Below, in pieces: positions 47,947 through 59,799 of a stretch of DNA of 64,000 bases. A model generated the notes under the pieces. The model saw only the letters and a program-made list of their open reading frames with translations, searched no databases and was not told where the DNA came from. A program made the translations under genes and the position numbers. The stretch lies in IMG/VR virus record IMGVR_UViG_3300027896_005002, positions 124,001-188,000 of that record, one strand, 5' to 3'. The stretch's first letter is position 1. Each line of letters starts with the position of its first letter.

Positions 47947-48906
47947 TTATACCTCATTGACAATAAAGCTAAAATCAGGTACCATAAAATCATCTTCTTT
48001 TTTACTGCCAAACATTCCTACAAGCATTTCATAATTTATATTAAAGTTAAGTTGTTTATATTTCACTACAGAAATGTGAGTGGAATAGTTTTGAACAAAT
48101 TTTAATCCTGGTTGCTTTTTAAATAAACTCACAAACCAACCTAATATTTCAATTTGACCGCCAGAACCACAACGTTTTACAGAAAAAATTGTTTTCCAAA
48201 ATTCTTTATTACCAAAATTATCAATTAATGTCGTTAAAACGTGTGATACTGTCGTTGTCCATGAGTCTGAATAAACAATTTTACAAAGGTTGTTCCATTT
48301 ATCTAATAAATATTTCCAATCATCAAGTGTTCCTTGTACATCTATCTTTGGAATATTACATGCTAACATTGAATAATTATAATAAGGACTGCACATATCA
48401 CAAAAGGCTGCCTGAAATGCATGTAGACTTTTTGGTGTTCTTGTTGAAAATATTGGAAAGAAATCAGTAGTATTAATTGGTATTCGATCTCTTAAAACAT
48501 CACATAAAGAATCTAATGGCATTAAAACAATATCATCACAATGAATAACAATGTCCTGTTTTTTATCAGTTGTTGAAAATAAATCTTGAAATTTTTTGGG
48601 ATTTGCTTTAATTATGAGAGTCATTTCACAAAGAAGAGTATACCAAATAATATCTGGTGTAACAACAACACCTAAATGATCAGCCCAACATTTTTCAAGA
48701 TAATGTAAATAATTTGTATGATAATGTTGAACATCACCTATTGAATCACAACGATATTCTGCTTTATCCGATTGTTTAACTTTTCGACTCATTTGCTTTA
48801 AAAAATAGTTTTTATAAGGAATAGGCACAGATGCTTGTTTTTTATTGTCCCATTCAGTTGGTGCTGAAGGAATGCCGACTTTTTCTTCTGAAAGTGTTAA
48901 GACCAT
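47947..48906 (-). CDS. DUF4419-like protein
   Basis: CWADHLGVVVTPDIIW, GIP-like CNIPKI.V.GT.DDW, GW. Confidence 0.65.
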   Translation of the reverse strand: MVLTLSEEKVGIPSAPTEWDNKKQASVPIPYKNYFLKQMSRKVKQSDKAEYRCDSIGDVQHYHTNYLHYLEKCWADHLGVVVTPDIIWYTLLCEMTLIIKANPKKFQDLFSTTDKKQDIVIHCDDIVLMPLDSLCDVLRDRIPINTTDFFPIFSTRTPKSLHAFQAAFCDMCSPYYNYSMLACNIPKIDVQGTLDDWKYLLDKWNNLCKIVYSDSWTTTVSHVLTTLIDNFGNKEFWKTIFSVKRCGSGGQIEILGWFVSLFKKQPGLKFVQNYSTHISVVKYKQLNFNINYEMLVGMFGSKKEDDFMVPDFSFIVNEV

Positions 48907-49487
48907 TTTTTCTCCTTATTTTAAAATTATAGCATGAACTTTCCAATTTTCAAAATGATGACCAATTCGTTTAAATGCCGGTGCAATAGCTCCACGACTT
49001 GTTTTTGCTTCAATACCTTCTATAGCTATATATGACCGTCCTTTACGTATAATTACTGTATATTCTTTATTTTTAAATAATCGTCGCATATTTTTGCAAA
49101 TTATGCTTTCTTTTTAAAAATTGTTTTCTTGAAAAAATAAGATGCTACAAGAAAAGAACAAACAAGAGGTATGAAAAAATGTGTAAGAATAAACATTATC
49201 ATATTAATTCCTTTCAAAAAGGTTTAAATTTCTGTAAATGCTTTATCTTCAACTTGTTTGTAATATCGAATAAAATTCATTACGTCATGCACAGATGCAT
49301 CATTACATGATAAATGTTCGCAAGAATGATCATTATCATATATAATTCGCATTGGTTGACCTTGTGGTCCTTTCCACCGTAAAACTTCCCATTGGCCTAC
49401 TGGCTTTAATGCTCTATCACTCAGCCAAGTTTTTAAATCTTCTAATTTACTGCGGTGTAAAAGACATCTATTAGCCATAGTTATTCC

Positions 49488-50417
49488 TTATATCTTATAT
49501 AAATTATTATCTTTAATGTATTGGAAAACATCAGGATGTATTAAATTTGTAGATGATTTTAAACCATCTATAAAATTCATTTGCCAATATTCTTTTAAAG
49601 AAGTTCGTACATCGGTAGAACTAATTTTCGATAAAGGTTTTTCTGGCACCAATAACATGTGCGGAGGTTTAAGATACCAACCACTTTTTTTAGCTATTTC
49701 TACTCCCGTTCTAGGAATGACTACAAATCTAATCATTCTTTCTAGGTCTTCATAATTTACCCATTTATTAAAAGTATTGGCATTGTCCATTCCAATTGCC
49801 ATACTAAAATCTCTTTCATTTTTTGCAAAATCTTCACTAAGAAGTTTTTTGACTAAATGATATGTTTCACCACCAAGTTTATGTTTTATTTCAAAATCTG
49901 ACACTGTTATTCGTCTATCATGTTTTGTTGCAAGTCGACACATGTTTAATCTATGTTCCGGACTTGCCATTCTCTTTCCATAAATATGTTTATAGCAAGG
50001 CATGATCCAAACATCATCAAATTGTTCACTGAAATCGAGTAAAAATTTTGCAACTTCTACATGGCCAGGTGTTATTGGATCAAAAGCACCGCCTAAAATT
50101 ACTGTGTATAATTTTCTTCCGTATGCATGATATTGATGTTGACGTCTTTTAATTTTATTTAAAGTAGCATTAACTAGTTCTTCAGGGTTCCAACCATTTT
50201 CATGAATGCCAGCCAATAATGTACAAAGAAGATCACCAGATTCTTCTTTAATATTAGCTATTGATGTAAACCGACTTAATTCAAGAGCTTCTTTAAAAAT
50301 ATCTTCATTTCTTTGCCTCAAAGGTGTTTGTCCAAAAGACTTTTCAAATTGTATACAAATTTTTTTCGATAAGTTTTTAATGTCCATTATTAATCTCCTT
50401 AAGATTTTCTCCTGCAA
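49488..50417 (-). CDS. nadD: MazG-like / NadD-type nucleotidyltransferase fusion
   Basis: N-terminal EALEL...KEESGDLL (MazG-like); GGAFDPITPGH, E, T, GMD, ISSTDVR (NMN/NaMN adenylyltransferase). Confidence 0.85.
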   Translation of the reverse strand: MQEKILRRLIMDIKNLSKKICIQFEKSFGQTPLRQRNEDIFKEALELSRFTSIANIKEESGDLLCTLLAGIHENGWNPEELVNATLNKIKRRQHQYHAYGRKLYTVILGGAFDPITPGHVEVAKFLLDFSEQFDDVWIMPCYKHIYGKRMASPEHRLNMCRLATKHDRRITVSDFEIKHKLGGETYHLVKKLLSEDFAKNERDFSMAIGMDNANTFNKWVNYEDLERMIRFVVIPRTGVEIAKKSGWYLKPPHMLLVPEKPLSKISSTDVRTSLKEYWQMNFIDGLKSSTNLIHPDVFQYIKDNNLYKI

Positions 50418-51486: not shown

Positions 51487-51690
51487 ATTATATCATAGAT
51501 AGAATTATTTTGTTTTTGATTGTTCGGTCGTTCGACGATTGACTTCTTCGTTTTCCATATGTATAGTCCATTGACTATGCATTTTTTTAAAATCGTCTAC
51601 GACTTCTTTGCGGATTTGTTCTTTTGTTTTCATATAGCCTTACAATTAAATATAATAACTTTTTAATATTAAAGTTATAAAATAATTTAC

Positions 51691-51729
51691 AAAAAAAAGG
51701 CCGTGAGAGAATACCCTTCGCTCACGGCT
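51691..51729 (-). terminator. intrinsic terminator closing the ncRNA cluster
   Basis: GCCGTGAG/CTCACGGC stem followed by T8 on the minus strand. Confidence 0.85.
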
Positions 51730-51776
51730 TTATTATTCTATTATTTGTATGAATTACAAGATAGAATGATGCTTTC

Positions 51777-51929
51777 TAATTACTTCGACATTTATCATTT
51801 AGCATAATGTCCCTGCTCTACCAACTGAGCTATCGACCCTCGTAGTATTCTTTTTTAAAAAAATACTGTGAGGGTCGAACTGGAATTGAACCAGTGACTG
51901 GAATAGTAATGACAAATTCTCCATAATTA
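51777..51929 (-). ncRNA. YrlA-like Y RNA with circularly permuted tRNA-like domain
   Basis: T arm ACTGG-TTCAATT-CCAGT and TCGACCC come BEFORE GGGTCGA-TA-GCTCAGTTGGTAGAGC (D arm); acceptor stem closed by a hairpin; flanks pair; GTCGAAG motif at 51789-51783. Confidence 0.8.
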
Positions 51930-51946
51930 TTGGCTTTTAGTATTAG

Positions 51947-52042
51947 TATGGAACGTTCACTCGCATAATTATGAATTAGGACCATCACAAGTGTCAAGTG
52001 AGCCCTAATAAGTATGAATATAAATATTATGATACGTTCATA
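51947..52042 (-). ncRNA. second Y-RNA-like structured RNA with bulged-C terminal stem
   Basis: TATGAACGT pairs ACGTT(C)CATA; CATAAT/ATTATG; inner TTAGGGCTCAC/GTGA..GTCCTAA hairpin. Confidence 0.5.
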
Positions 52043-52804
52043 TTATCCATTAATAAATTGAAAAATATATTTGCCAATATTGAGTGAATTATCAACAACA
52101 GTATCATTTGCTCTTGCTCTTGCTTTTTTCACGGCTGCAATCAAAATATCAATCCTCGAAAGGATATCACTTTTTTGTGCAGGTGAAAGTAATCCACTGA
52201 AATTTGTTTGTTTCCAATTACCGACAGGAACATCTTCATTAATAAGTTGAACCTGTGGAGGATGTTTGTCAGTTCCTGGATGTAAAGTAATAGGTTTTGC
52301 AATTTTATTTGTTCTGACCCTTGATGTCGGTTCGGTTTTAAATCGACCTTTTCCGGCTTCGGTATCAGGAAGCCATTTCTTTGCTGGATCCAATGTCGGA
52401 ATAACATCATAAATTTGTGTTCTTAAACTTTCCAATTGATTTTCAAGTTGTACTAATGCCTGAACCGGTACATTCTTAATTGTTAAGTCTTTGCCATCTT
52501 CGCCATTAATATTAATATCACCTTTTGCTTTTGTGTTGGCATCTTCTTTTTGTAAAATGATATCAAACAGTCTGGTCATCGATTTTTCAAAATATGTTAA
52601 TTTGTCGCCCACTGTTGTAATTGGAGTTGGTAATTCCTGTTCAGGAATATCTTTATCTGAATCTGCAAAGGGTTCATATAACTTCGCGTGTGTGCTGAAT
52701 AAGTGTGCCTTTTTTGTAAAAGTTTGATTGGTTTCAGCAATAATTTTACCTGCAGTTCCTCTGACATCTTTTTCTACCGCTACTAGCTCATGTAATTTTC
52801 CCAT
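52043..52804 (-). CDS. conserved hypothetical protein (DUF7873-like from memory)
   Basis: KLHELVAVEK, QKEDAN..AK.D, VP...L..LE.QL, R..K, T.KHP.QV....EDVPVG.W....FSG, RID.LI.AVKKAR.RAN. Confidence 0.7.
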   Translation of the reverse strand: MGKLHELVAVEKDVRGTAGKIIAETNQTFTKKAHLFSTHAKLYEPFADSDKDIPEQELPTPITTVGDKLTYFEKSMTRLFDIILQKEDANTKAKGDININGEDGKDLTIKNVPVQALVQLENQLESLRTQIYDVIPTLDPAKKWLPDTEAGKGRFKTEPTSRVRTNKIAKPITLHPGTDKHPPQVQLINEDVPVGNWKQTNFSGLLSPAQKSDILSRIDILIAAVKKARARANDTVVDNSLNIGKYIFQFING

Positions 52805-53826
52805 AAAACACTCCTGTTAAAATTTTGTTTATATATAATTTTCTGTTGTTGTAGTATTATTAACATGCCTTTTTTACTCCTTAATTTACGATAGTCAGAT
52901 CAATGAAAAAATATATAGCAAATAATATATTAAAATAATCATATTGTCAAAGTTTTATTGAAATTCGGGCTAAAATTACATCGAGAAATTTAATCGGTTT
53001 ACCTTATTACTATACAATCATATTTCTTGTGTAAAATTTTTAATAATCTCCTTATAACTTCGCTATTATTAAATAAAAAAAGAAAGGAAAGGAGGTCACT
53101 ATGAAAATGTTCTTTTTAATCTTATTAAGCATCTGTTTGTGTTACAGCAAAGAACATTATAGGGACACAACTTACATCCATGCGTTTAAGTTTATTGATG
53201 CTTTGGAAAACCAGAATCAACATAACTATAGAGGCTCTGGGTATTATGAGTACAGCTTTCATCCAATAAGTTTGTTTCCGTTGTTTTGCTTGCAGGATAA
53301 AGTTGTAGACAAGTTTATGTCCCAAAATCCTAAAGATGTAATATATTTAACAGATTTAATAAATTTCTATAGAACTATAGAAAAAAGTAGTGTGACATTT
53401 ACACGTTTGTATATTGGTGTCGTGCATTATATACAAATTGGTAGATCATATCCAGTAAAAAAATATTATACATTGTATACGTGCATGTCAACTGATAACA
53501 AATCGTGGTTCATAGATAAAACACCGCTGACGGTGACATTGATTTTGACAGATCGTTTCAAACATTTATATGGGTGTAAATAATATGAAACACATAACAT
53601 TTGCTCTTATGCTACTTTTATTTTGCGCGCCGTTGAATAAGACTTATGTTAATATTAAAGAAACAATTGATGAACAACTCGCAAAAGATAGATATAAAAT
53701 CTATACTGAAAGTGTAGAATCAGTGAGACCAAAATTATTAAATGACAGTATTGTAAAAGTTGATACAATAAAAAGCGTTACAGGCAGCAAATTCTATGTT
53801 TTAACGGTTAAAATGAAAAGTAAATA

Positions 53827-56229: not shown

Positions 56230-56712
56230 CTAAAGCTTAGTTTCTTTATAGTTCCTTTTAGTTAGTTTTCTATTTAATTTTTCTTCTAAAGAAGATTTAG
56301 CCTGCTCTAAACTCGGTGATTCATCTATAATAGCTATTTTTGTCGTATTTGGATATCCGATACGACCATAAGCGTTAGCAGCTGCATAAGTACCGTCATC
56401 CTTTTGCATTATCACAAAATAATGAAATTTGTTATTGGGTCCTTCTCGTTTTGTAATATACTTTCTGAAAATAGGATTTCCTGTAGATCCAATAGCTGCT
56501 CTAAGTTTATCTAAAGTATCACTAGATTGAGATCTTGAAGGATCATAAATTTTAAGACCACTAGTTTCAGATCTTTTGGGTGGTTTTCCTGTTACTTTCC
56601 TACGAGACTGTGGATGACGGTGTAAATATGCAATTTGCAAATCATAAGGAACATTCATCCATTGACGAGCTTCTTTAATAAATTCTAATAAAATTGCAGC
56701 TAAATGTTTCAT
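56230..56712 (-). CDS. WGR-domain protein with MKH leader
   Basis: NKFHYFVI, YGRIG, A...LEEKL..KL.K.Y. Confidence 0.7.
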   Translation of the reverse strand: MKHLAAILLEFIKEARQWMNVPYDLQIAYLHRHPQSRRKVTGKPPKRSETSGLKIYDPSRSQSSDTLDKLRAAIGSTGNPIFRKYITKREGPNNKFHYFVIMQKDDGTYAAANAYGRIGYPNTTKIAIIDESPSLEQAKSSLEEKLNRKLTKRNYKETKL

Positions 56713-58560: not shown

Positions 58561-59799
58561 ATGAATATGAATGATAGTACAAAAAAGAAAATAAAAGAAT
58601 CATTGAGATTAACAAAACTAAAACGTCAAACACAACGTTGTAAAAGTGTAGAGCTCAAAATAGATTATTCAAATCTTAACAAACAACAAAAAGAATTTCT
58701 CAAAATGTTTTTTGTTGAAGCTAAATGGTTATATAATTTTATTCTTTCACAAGATAATATTTTTAAACTTGATTACAAAATTTCTACTGTTGTCATTTTA
58801 AAAAACAAATGTCAAGTTAGAAAACAACTACGTTATTTATTAGCTAAAAACAAACAAGATATTTTAAATCTTATTCGACAAAACATTACTGCGCTTTCTA
58901 AATTGAAAAATAAAGGCTGTAAAGTAGGTAAATTAAAATTTAAATCTTCTTATAATTGTATTGGTCTGTCGCAATATGGTCATACACATAAAATAACTGG
59001 TAATAATCGAATAAAAATAAATGGTATTAAAAAACCTATAATAGTATATGGTTTAAATCAAGTAAAAAATAATTATGAAATAGCTAATGCTAAATTAATA
59101 CAGAAAGCATCTGGTTATTATATAAAGTTAGTTTGTTATGAACTTAAATCGCAATCTGAACGGAAAGGAGAAGATATAGGGATTGATTTTGGAATAAAGA
59201 ATAATTTTACATTATCTAATGGTAAAGTAATTAATGTTATATCTATTGAAGAAACAGAACGACTTAAATTGTTACAAAAGAAGATGCAAAGACAGCTTAA
59301 AAGTTCTAACAATAGATACAAAACAAAAACTAAAATTCAAAAAGAATATGAAAAAATAACAAATAGAAAGAATGACGCTGCAAATAAGATTATTAACTAT
59401 TTATTGACAAATTATAATAGAATTTACATACAGGATGAACAATTATCTGATTGGCAAAAAAATTATAAAAAAGTACAATACAATTGTTTAGGTAGAGTTA
59501 AATTTAAATTGAAACGATCAAATAATACTTTTGTAATCAATAAATATTGCGCTTCAACCAAATTATGTTATTGTTGTGGTAAAATAAATAAAATTAATTT
59601 GTCACAAAGAATTTATGAATGTAGTTGTGGGTTAAAAGAAGATAGAGATCTTAAAGCAGCAAAAACTATAAAATATTTAGGACAACAGCAGCAACAGTAT
59701 AATGTACCTATGGACTATAGGGATGTTAAGTTTGTGGAGAATATAACCTCTACGTTAACAATTGGTTCACCATTTGTTAATATAAGTTATATTCAATGA
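58561..59799 (+). mobile_element. tnpB: TnpB (IS200/IS605 OrfB) RNA-guided nuclease gene without tnpA
   Basis: GIDFGIK (RuvC-I), IQDE (RuvC-II region), STKLCYCCG...CSCG zinc finger, DRDLKAA (RuvC-III). Confidence 0.85.

What the first reader, a model, noticed from the sequence alone, without database searches (positions are those of the whole stretch)
51947..52042. Second structured RNA with a bulged-C terminal helix, in tandem with the YrlA-like RNA
Seen: starting right after the stop codon at 52043, 5' TATGAACGT pairs with 3' ACGTT-C-CATA leaving one bulged C. An internal loop containing GCGAGTG follows, then CATAAT/ATTATG and an inner TTAGGGCTCAC hairpin. A third hairpin (51735-51767) and a strong terminator (51691-51729) close the unit. 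Established: a bulged-C helix is the Ro60-binding element of Y RNAs, and bacterial Ro60 loci often carry two Y RNAs. Inference: a polycistronic Y-RNA cassette processed from the upstream mRNA.
Basis: partly seen in the sequence, partly recalled or inferred. Interest (0 to 1): 0.7.

Follow-up and report, generated by a model that had tools for sequence, protein, structure and literature searches.

The report
Phage hexamer-repeat RNA domain, not Y RNA
The hairpin is real and conserved, but it is the front domain of an apparently undescribed phage RNA that always follows one gene of unknown function (DUF7873) and carries a tRNA look-alike; nothing links it to Ro60, the protein that binds Y RNAs.

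Summary
The window lies in a 416-kb phage record. The hairpin at 51947-52042 (- strand) exists. Its fold is not unusual on its own (z -1.7), but it is conserved. In 21 related loci a 6-bp closing helix (52034-52039 with 51951-51956) covaries. It encloses single-stranded hexamer repeats with U and A fixed every six bases.

The "bulged C" (51950) is the first base of a conserved unpaired hexamer. The three A-U pairs beyond it form in only 6-12 of 21 relatives.

The element always sits between a DUF7873 gene and a circularly permuted, YrlA-like tRNA mimic. At least 90 of 127 non-redundant DUF7873 loci carry such a mimic within 450 nt. The unit ends in a hairpin with a conserved loop.

No Ro60 (TROVE) gene was found in this record or in ten other phage genomes with the cassette. 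The bacterial Ro60 motif is absent from the hairpin and at chance level across the family.

Best reading: this is the 5' domain of a DUF7873-linked composite phage RNA, probably a multivalent protein-binding platform tethered to a tRNA mimic. The mechanism is inferred, and no RNA data were available.

The parts
52043..52804 (-). DUF7873 gene (253 aa). It is the only conserved protein-coding neighbour of the RNA unit.
   Evidence: Pfam PF25283, E 2.8e-69. 160 homologues. No other ORF family is shared within +/-3 kb across 80 phage loci.
52034..52039 (-). 5' strand (GAACGU) of the conserved 6-bp closing helix of the hexamer-repeat domain.
   Evidence: Pairs with 51951-51956. Three of the six pairs show compensatory changes in 21 loci.
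52005..52034 (-). Array of five in-register hexamers (UAUCAU AAUAUU UAUAUU CAUACU UAUUAG), read as N-A-K-R-Y-U.
   Evidence: In alignment A3, columns 64/70/76/82 are U in 19-21 of 21 sequences. Columns 66/72/78/84 are A in 20-21 of 21. Lag-6 self-similarity across 102 loci.
51978..52006 (-). Variable apical hairpin (AGGGCUCAC...GUGAUGGUCCU). This position tolerates insertions.
   Evidence: Folds in the MFE structure. Relatives have unrelated hairpins of other lengths, none at all, or in L123 the whole tRNA-like module at this position.
51962..51973 (-). Two further hexamers (CAUAAU UAUGCG) on the 3' side of the loop.
   Evidence: Aligned with hexamers followed by (A/U)UUG in relatives.
51951..51956 (-). 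3' strand (ACGUUC) of the closing helix.
51939..51950 (-). Two conserved unpaired hexamers directly after the helix (CAUACU AAUACU).
   Evidence: A CAKRYU hexamer follows the helix in all 21 relatives.
51789..51915 (-). YrlA-like, circularly permuted tRNA mimic. Basal stem 51908-51916 with 51791-51799. T arm 51879-51895. Acceptor strands 51870-51878 and 51833-51841, closed by a long A/U hairpin. D arm 51815-51830.
   Evidence: Rfam RF02553, 35.6 bits, E 3.9e-6, below the gathering score of 69. All helices covary in 8 relatives. It is the only such module in the 416-kb record.
51735..51767 (-). It contains a CAUACAA motif shared by some relatives.
   Evidence: Folds in the window, but there is no consensus structure in 8 relatives.
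51691..51728 (-). Terminal hairpin (51700-51728) with the conserved loop GGGUAU, then U8 (51691-51698). Probably a terminator plus a recognition loop.
   Evidence: The stem covaries and the loop GGGUAU is invariant in 8 relatives. The loop reads (C/A)AGGNUA(G/U) in distant phages.
51968..51997 (-). Sigma-70-like promoter match inside the hairpin (TTGACA, 18 nt, CATAAT).
   Evidence: 11 of 12 matches. No TTGACA-type -35 was seen at this place in the close relatives by eye; this was not scanned formally.
51783..51789 (-). GUCGAAG heptamer on the 3' side of the tRNA-like basal stem. It fits the loose Ro60 motif but is on the wrong side.
   Evidence: The motif is at chance frequency in the family (14 against 13.6 expected).

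Best explanation
The hairpin is the 5' domain of a composite phage non-coding RNA encoded directly downstream of a DUF7873 gene.

Shown:
- A short covarying helix closes a large loop that displays 4-8 single-stranded hexamers (U-N-A-K-R-Y, period 6).
- One or two more hexamers follow the helix.
- Next comes a permuted tRNA mimic, and the unit ends in a hairpin with a conserved loop.
- In one relative (L123) the predicted minimum-energy fold has the closing helix enclosing the tRNA mimic, which argues that the two are domains of one RNA.

Inferred:
- The periodic array is a multivalent single-stranded binding platform for an oligomeric protein. The product of the upstream DUF7873 gene is the most likely candidate.
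- The RNA would then work like a Y RNA in logic: a protein-binding module tethered to a tRNA-like effector module. The protein and the binding module are different from those of Y RNAs.
- The likely arena is tRNA processing or the phage-host conflict over tRNAs.
For: - Core helix covariation in 21 loci: pair 12-198 is GC 12 / AU 9; pair 15-195 is GC 11 / AU 10; pair 16-194 is UA 10 / CG 6 / AU 2 / GC 1 / UG 1. No shuffle of 500 reaches the observed covariation score.
- Non-circular test in the wider family. The 3' strand was located only by its flanking sequence motifs. Its perfect 5-mer complement then lies within 60 nt of the stop codon in 21 of 37 loci, against 2.4 expected, with 19 different helix sequences.
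- Hexamer periodicity.
- A covariance model of the element hits only positions directly after DUF7873 genes, and it scores one clear hit in the window's own 416-kb record.
- A permuted tRNA-like module lies within 450 nt of the gene in at least 90 of 127 loci. In control flanks there was 1 hit in 406 kb.
- No other conserved neighbouring gene.
- In L123 the predicted fold has the closing helix enclosing the tRNA-like module.
- DUF7873 is mildly basic, with conserved basic stretches.
- The cassette occurs in cultured phages of Rhizobium, Gordonia, Arthrobacter, Ralstonia, Klebsiella and Vibrio, and of two cyanobacterial genera.
Against: - There is no RNA-level evidence. No RNA run was listed.
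- Binding by DUF7873 is untested. The complex prediction was not run for protein-RNA.
- The DUF7873 fold has no informative relative.
- The window's own lag-6 signal is only marginally the best lag (0.50 against 0.47).
- The sequences for the 21-locus alignment were chosen using the 4-bp core, so only the two inner pairs are free of selection bias.
- Gene-RNA linkage could also reflect a cis role for the mRNA.
Confidence: 0.5

Rival explanations
1. Second Y RNA (YrlB-like). The bulged-C helix binds Ro60, supplied by the host in trans, and the RNA is cut out of a polycistronic precursor together with the YrlA-like RNA.
For: The neighbouring RNA matches Rfam YrlA at E 3.9e-6. Characterised bacteria have two or more Y RNAs from one precursor (PMC4201824). 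Ro60 orthologues or YrlA RNAs are reported in genera that also host cassette phages (Rhizobium; Gordonia's relative Mycobacterium; PMC4201824). A GUCGAAG heptamer lies at 51783-51789.
Against: The bulge is not conserved and sits on the 3' strand. There is no GNCGAA or GGUCCGA in the hairpin, and the motif is at chance level in 108 loci. No TROVE gene was found in 11 phage genomes with the cassette. The YrlA score is well below gathering (35.6 against 69). The conserved interior is a hexamer array, not a Y-RNA-type internal loop.
Confidence: 0.06
2. Cis-acting 3'-UTR and processing element of the DUF7873 mRNA. The hairpin right after the stop codon protects the mRNA 3' end after endonucleolytic cleavage. 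Cleavage would be by RNase E at the A/U-rich hexamers, or by RNase P at the tRNA-like module as in MALAT1-mascRNA. This would set DUF7873 expression rather than form an RNP.
For: The helix starts 4 nt after the stop codon with no intervening terminator. 72 of 108 permuted modules have a 7-bp acceptor stem followed by N-CCA; a 7-bp acceptor stem is what makes M. smegmatis YrlA an RNase P substrate (PMC4201824). CAUAUU-type hexamers resemble the RNase E preference R-N|W-U-U (my own knowledge, not tested).
Against: It does not explain the strict 6-nt periodicity, the invariant U and A in GC-rich clades (CAGCUU), the conserved terminal loop, or why the helix can enclose the tRNA-like module. The window's module lacks CCA and has a long closed stem.
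Confidence: 0.2
3. DNA-level signal. Either an internal sigma-70-type promoter (TTGACA 51997-51992, CATAAT 51973-51968) drives the YrlA-like RNA, or the array of -10-like hexamers (invariant A2 and T6) is read by RNA polymerase/sigma. The hairpin would then be incidental.
For: An 11 of 12 promoter match lies inside the element. A second 11 of 12 match sits sensibly upstream of the DUF7873 gene. The hexamer invariants coincide with the invariant positions of a -10 element (the comparison rests on my own knowledge).
Against: No TTGACA-type -35 was seen at this place in the close relatives by eye; promoter scores were not computed. It falls in the variable apical hairpin. The promoter scan found 14 sites against 10.0 +/- 3.6 in shuffles. 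The closing helix covaries with varied sequences, and one G-U pair occurs in it, which fits RNA pairing. The hexamers are strand-specific with respect to the gene.
Confidence: 0.08
4. RNA-RNA interaction domain. The hexamers pair with another part of the unit (the terminal loop GGGUAU) or with a host RNA, acting as a pseudoknot or sponge rather than a protein platform.
For: In the window clade CAUACU can form 5 pairs with GGUAU of the terminal loop. The loop is invariant in 8 relatives.
Against: The complementarity is not seen in the CAGCUU, CAGUGU and CAACUU clades, whose terminal loops still read AGGNUA. This was checked by eye only.
Confidence: 0.08

Closest known systems
Bacterial Y RNAs YrlA/YrlB (Rfam RF02553; Chen et al. 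2014, PMC4201824)
   Same: Modular logic: a stem-closed module next to a circularly permuted tRNA mimic (T arm, closed acceptor stem, D arm). Several RNAs or domains come from one transcript. Also found in phages.
   Different: No Ro60 gene, no GNCGAAN0-1G or GGUCCGA 5'-strand motif, no conserved bulge. The partner gene is DUF7873. The module is a periodic hexamer array. Two thirds of family members encode N-CCA after a 7-bp acceptor stem.
TRAP-binding RNA of the Bacillus trp leader, (G/U)AG triplets spaced by 2-3 nt (my own knowledge)
   Same: Short single-stranded repeats at a fixed 5-6 nt period, suited to wrapping around an oligomeric protein.
   Different: The repeat is U-N-A plus three semi-conserved bases. 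There are fewer copies (about 5-9). It is closed by a helix and fused to a tRNA mimic. There is no TRAP-like gene, and binding is untested.
MALAT1-mascRNA and M. smegmatis YrlA processing (RNase P cleavage of a tRNA-like element, CCA addition)
   Same: A tRNA-like element downstream of a longer transcript, with a 7-bp acceptor stem and CCA in most family members.
   Different: The module here is permuted, so cleavage would leave two base-paired pieces. The window's copy lacks CCA. No processing data exist.
Two-piece (permuted) tmRNA with SmpB
   Same: Permuted tRNA-like gene order with an encoded CCA, and a dedicated small partner protein.
   Different: ARAGORN finds no tmRNA in the window. 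I saw no G3-U70 pair in the acceptor stems read by eye. There is no tag reading frame. DUF7873 is unrelated to SmpB by Pfam.

Membership tests
Y RNA (Ro60-binding; YrlB/Yrn2-type second Y RNA) | Ro60/Rsr (TROVE) orthologue encoded nearby (within about 4 kb, same strand) | tested here: not met
   No TROVE match in the 416-kb record or in 10 other cassette-bearing phage genomes. The control genomes were detected.
Y RNA (Ro60-binding; YrlB/Yrn2-type second Y RNA) | Conserved 5'-strand motif GNCGAAN0-1G (bacteria) or GGUCCGA (metazoa) in the terminal stem | tested here: not met
   Absent from 51947-52042. 14 of 108 family loci have it somewhere, against 13.6 expected. Motif definition from PMC4201824.
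Y RNA (Ro60-binding; YrlB/Yrn2-type second Y RNA) | Terminal stem formed by the 5' and 3' ends, with a conserved bulge | tested here: not met
   A 6-bp stem is conserved. The pairs that create the bulge form in only 6-12 of 21 relatives, and the bulge is on the 3' strand.
Y RNA (Ro60-binding; YrlB/Yrn2-type second Y RNA) | Physical binding by Ro60 | not testable with these tools
   Needs a pull-down or EMSA.
YrlA (RF02553), for the adjacent RNA at 51789-51915 | T arm, closed acceptor-like stem and D arm in permuted order, with a basal stem | tested here: met
   Rfam alignment. All helices covary in 8 relatives.
YrlA (RF02553), for the adjacent RNA at 51789-51915 | Score at or above Rfam's gathering threshold | tested here: not met
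   35.6 bits against 69. 32.4 bits in L063.
Any Rfam 15 family, for the hairpin itself | Covariance-model match | tested here: not met
   No gathering-level hit in the window. Nothing relevant at E up to 10 over 51600-52150. Only tRNA and tmRNA in 20 related loci.
Intrinsic terminator, for 51691-51728 | G+C-rich hairpin followed by a U run | tested here: met
   8-bp stem plus U8. The simple scan missed it because the loop has 13 nt. GC-rich relatives lack the U run.

The most novel reading that the evidence does not exclude
DUF7873 and its downstream RNA form a new, widespread class of phage ribonucleoprotein. It would be a Ro60-independent analogue of Y RNPs, in which a periodic hexamer array binds the protein and tethers a permuted, often CCA-ending tRNA mimic. 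Its use would be in tRNA processing or in countering host attacks on tRNAs.
Probability: 0.35. Interest if true: 0.85.

Novelty: new variant of a known kind. Interest (0 to 1): 0.68.

Why it matters
tRNA-mimicking Y-like RNAs have so far been tied to Ro60. Here the same kind of tRNA mimic is coupled, in over a hundred phage contigs and in cultured phages of hosts from at least three bacterial phyla, to a different gene of unknown function. It also carries a previously unlisted RNA domain with a strict 6-nt periodicity.

That gives DUF7873 a concrete, testable hypothesis as an RNA-binding partner. It adds a candidate new structured RNA motif for Rfam. It also suggests that some odd "tRNA" calls in phage genomes are halves of permuted modules, for example the "tRNA-Sup-TTA" of Klebsiella phage FBKp24. 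If the RNP acts on tRNA metabolism, it bears on how large phages defend their translation supply.

Tried and rejected
- The search for related loci with the single protein found no relatives; the alignment-based scans worked.
- Literature: no paper mentions DUF7873. Searches for permuted or tRNA-like phage RNAs returned nothing on this cassette.
- DUF7873 function: PHROGs, NCBIfam and PADLOC gave no match. Foldseek against PDB gave only weak PUR-alpha-like hits (E 0.03, TM 0.14-0.23). VIA-align's best hit was an uncharacterised protein (3kdq, Z 8.7). AFDB, ESM Atlas and PDB-sequence searches were uninformative. I do not claim a PUR fold.
- Complex prediction (two DUF7873 copies plus the RNA) was not folded by the tool and is no evidence either way.
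- No RNA sequencing run was listed.
- Other YrlA-model hits in the genome are tandem tRNA genes and were rejected.
- Small ORF in the hairpin: only ATG plus 3 codons, and not conserved; rejected.
- A helix search with strict positional rules gave 40 of 102 loci against 12.4 in shuffles. It missed the window's own helix, which has GUG instead of UUG, so I treat it as supporting only.

Full report
**Context**

The window is bases 124001-188000 of a 416-kb IMG/VR phage record from a freshwater metagenome, estimated 77% complete. All features below are on the - strand.

A 253-aa gene (52804-52043) matches Pfam DUF7873 at E 2.8e-69. Its stop codon is followed after 4 nt by the reported hairpin (52042-51947). 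Next comes a sub-threshold YrlA match at 51915-51789 (35.6 bits, E 3.9e-6, gathering score 69). After that lie an A/U-rich stretch and a hairpin plus U8 at 51728-51691.

Rfam has no gathering-level hit anywhere in the window, and ARAGORN finds no tRNA in it.

**Observation**

As a single sequence it is not exceptional: MFE -19.1 kcal/mol, z -1.71, with 11 of 200 shuffles as good. The whole 361-nt unit is far more structured (z -6.0).

**Homologues**

DUF7873 has 160 relatives in the protein collection. Profile-guided scans returned 80 phage loci and 80 metagenome loci. Closer relatives were fetched by exact protein look-up.

In the four closest relatives read first (76-59% protein identity) the downstream region is syntenic. 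It shows the same helix, the same flanking motifs, the tRNA-like module and the terminal hairpin.

**The hairpin in 21 loci**

A MAFFT alignment of 21 loci (A3) and explicit pair counting give a 6-bp helix, G-R-A-C-N-N with N'-N'-G-U-Y-C:
- Pair 12-198: GC 12, AU 9.
- Pair 15-195: GC 11, AU 10.
- Pair 16-194: UA 10, CG 6, AU 2, GC 1, UG 1.
- 81% of cells are paired, against 34-41% when the partner is slid by +/-1 or +/-2 columns or by +3, and 16% at -3.
- No shuffle of 500 reaches the covariation score.

The sequences were picked using the 4-bp core, so the two inner pairs are the unbiased evidence.

The three outer pairs that create the bulged C are formed in only 6, 12 and 12 of 21 sequences. 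In most relatives the C simply begins a conserved unpaired hexamer, C-A-K-R-Y-U.

RNAalifold on 8 full units keeps only this helix within the element. The inner CAUAAU/AUUAUG pairing, the apical hairpin and the "third hairpin" have no consensus.

**Hexamer array**

Inside the loop, alignment columns 64, 70, 76 and 82 are U in 19-21 of 21 sequences. Columns 66, 72, 78 and 84 are A in 20-21 of 21. This is U-N-A-K-R-Y with period 6.

The window has five in-register copies at 52034-52005, two at 51973-51962 and two after the helix at 51950-51939.

In 102 loci lag 6 has the highest self-similarity: mean 0.53 against at most 0.41 for other lags. It is the unique best of 8 lags in 59 loci. In the window alone the signal is marginal (0.50 against 0.47).

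Hexamer sequence differs between clades (CAUAYU here; CAGCUU, CAGUGU and CAACUU elsewhere). Within a phage, the copies inside the loop and after the helix are of the same type.

**Wider family**

In more distant phages the helix has quite different sequences, for example GGACUU/AAGUCC, UGGAGG/CCUCCA and UUCGGG/CCCGAA. It sits in the same frame: hexamers, then (A/U)UUG, the 3' strand, and a hexamer.

I ran a test that locates the 3' strand only by those flanking motifs. A perfect 5-mer complement lies within 60 nt of the stop codon in 21 of 37 loci, against 2.4 expected from cross-locus permutation, with 19 different 5-mers.

A covariance model of the element (R1) hits, beyond its training set, only positions directly after DUF7873 genes (L015, L009, L070, L071). 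It scores one clear hit in the 416-kb record; a second match is at chance level (E 0.14).

**The rest of the unit**

The adjacent RNA is a circularly permuted tRNA mimic. It has a T arm, an acceptor 3' strand, a closing loop, an acceptor 5' strand, a D arm and a basal stem. All helices covary.

A strict detector finds such a module within 450 nt of the gene in 90 of 127 non-redundant loci. It finds 1 hit in 406 kb of control flank. Several of the misses have the module by eye.

In 72 of 108 modules the 7-bp acceptor 3' strand is followed by N-CCA and a short linker. The window's clade instead has UCAC or UCAA and a long closed stem.

Many loci add a genuine tRNA or a second permuted module.

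The terminal hairpin keeps its loop, (C/A)AGGNUA(G/U), while its stem covaries. GC-rich phages lack the U run.

In L123 the predicted minimum-energy fold has the hexamer-domain helix enclosing the whole tRNA-like module. This argues that the two are parts of one RNA.

**Ro60 link**

No TROVE domain is found in the window's record or in 10 other genomes with the cassette. These include the deposited genomes of phages Phendrix, phiRSL1 and FBKp24 and two metagenomic records estimated at 98% and 100% complete. The positive controls were detected.

Chen et al. define the bacterial recognition motif as GNCGAAN0-1G near the 5' end and note that Ro60 mainly reads the 5' strand (PMC4201824; also 10.1101/312249). 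The hairpin has no such motif, and its bulge is on the 3' strand.

Across 108 loci the motif occurs in 14, against 13.6 expected, at scattered positions. The window does have GUCGAAG at 51789-51783, but it lies 3' of the tRNA-like stem.

**The protein**

No other gene family is shared within +/-3 kb of DUF7873 in 80 phage loci. The RNA is therefore its only conserved neighbour.

The AlphaFold model is confident (pLDDT 91) but has no informative structural or sequence relative. The protein is mildly basic (pI 8.6), with a basic beta-hairpin and a conserved KKARARAN helix.

The cassette is present in cultured phages of Rhizobium, Arthrobacter, Gordonia, Rhodococcus, Ralstonia, Klebsiella/Serratia, Vibrio, Pseudanabaena and Microcoleus. 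It often lies inside tRNA gene arrays.

**Interpretation**

I am confident of the following. The hairpin is a conserved domain of a DUF7873-linked composite phage RNA, and its conserved features are a 6-bp helix and a periodic single-stranded array.

The following is inferred. The array is a multivalent protein platform, DUF7873 being the obvious candidate. The RNA follows Y-RNA logic with different parts.

The rivals are a cis-acting processing or stability element for the mRNA, an internal promoter (11 of 12 match at 51997-51968, not seen by eye in relatives), RNA-RNA pairing with the terminal loop, and host Ro60 binding in trans. None is excluded without RNA and binding data. None of those data could be obtained here.

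**Verdict**

What is there appears to be an undescribed variant of the tRNA-mimic RNP theme. It is absent from Rfam 15 and from the searched literature.

Noticed in passing
L092 3518-3597 (Klebsiella phage vB_KpM_FBKp24, NC_061421.1): The annotated 'tRNA-Sup-TTA' ends in the T arm, acceptor 3' strand and ACCA of a permuted tRNA-like module downstream of the DUF7873 gene. It looks like a mis-call of half a permuted module, not a suppressor tRNA.
   Followed up: partly
window 51968-51997 (-) and 52922-52950 (-): Two near-consensus sigma-70-type promoter matches (11 of 12). One lies inside the hairpin (TTGACA in its apical loop, CATAAT in a hexamer). The other is about 110 nt upstream of the DUF7873 start codon.
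   Followed up: partly
window 51700-51728 (-); L006-L172: The terminal hairpin loop (C/A)AGGNUA(G/U) is conserved across very distant phages while the stem covaries. It resembles a tRNA D-loop (GG-UA) and is more than a terminator.
   Followed up: partly
L021, L026, L027, L063, L085 and others (72 of 108 loci): Most permuted tRNA-like modules encode N-CCA right after a 7-bp acceptor 3' strand, followed by a short A/U linker. This suggests RNase P-type opening into a two-piece, CCA-ending RNA. The window's clade lacks this.
   Followed up: partly
L011, L018, L028, L043, L059, L132, L163, L164, L170: A subfamily motif ACUCAAYGAAAGA lies about 30 nt 3' of the D arm. The window has GUCGAAG (51783-51789) at the corresponding place.
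   Followed up: no
L090 572-1100 (Gordonia phage Phendrix): The phage encodes its own tmRNA (Rfam, 89 bits) in the same tRNA array that holds the DUF7873 cassette, which there has two permuted modules.
   Followed up: no
window 58561-59799 (+): An IS605 OrfB/TnpB-like protein (OrfB_IS605 plus Cas12f1-like TNB domain) inside the phage genome.
   Followed up: no
window 47947-50417 (-) and 56230-56712 (-): Nearby genes: a cytidylyltransferase-like protein with a weak, sub-threshold MazG match (possibly nucleotide or NAD metabolism), a DUF4419 protein and a WGR-domain protein. None is conserved next to DUF7873 in other phages.
   Followed up: no
G000:C1 60858-90435 and 312712-316228: The phage carries 28 tRNA genes in two regions far from the cassette. 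The weaker YrlA-model hits in the genome are tandem tRNA junctions.
   Followed up: yes
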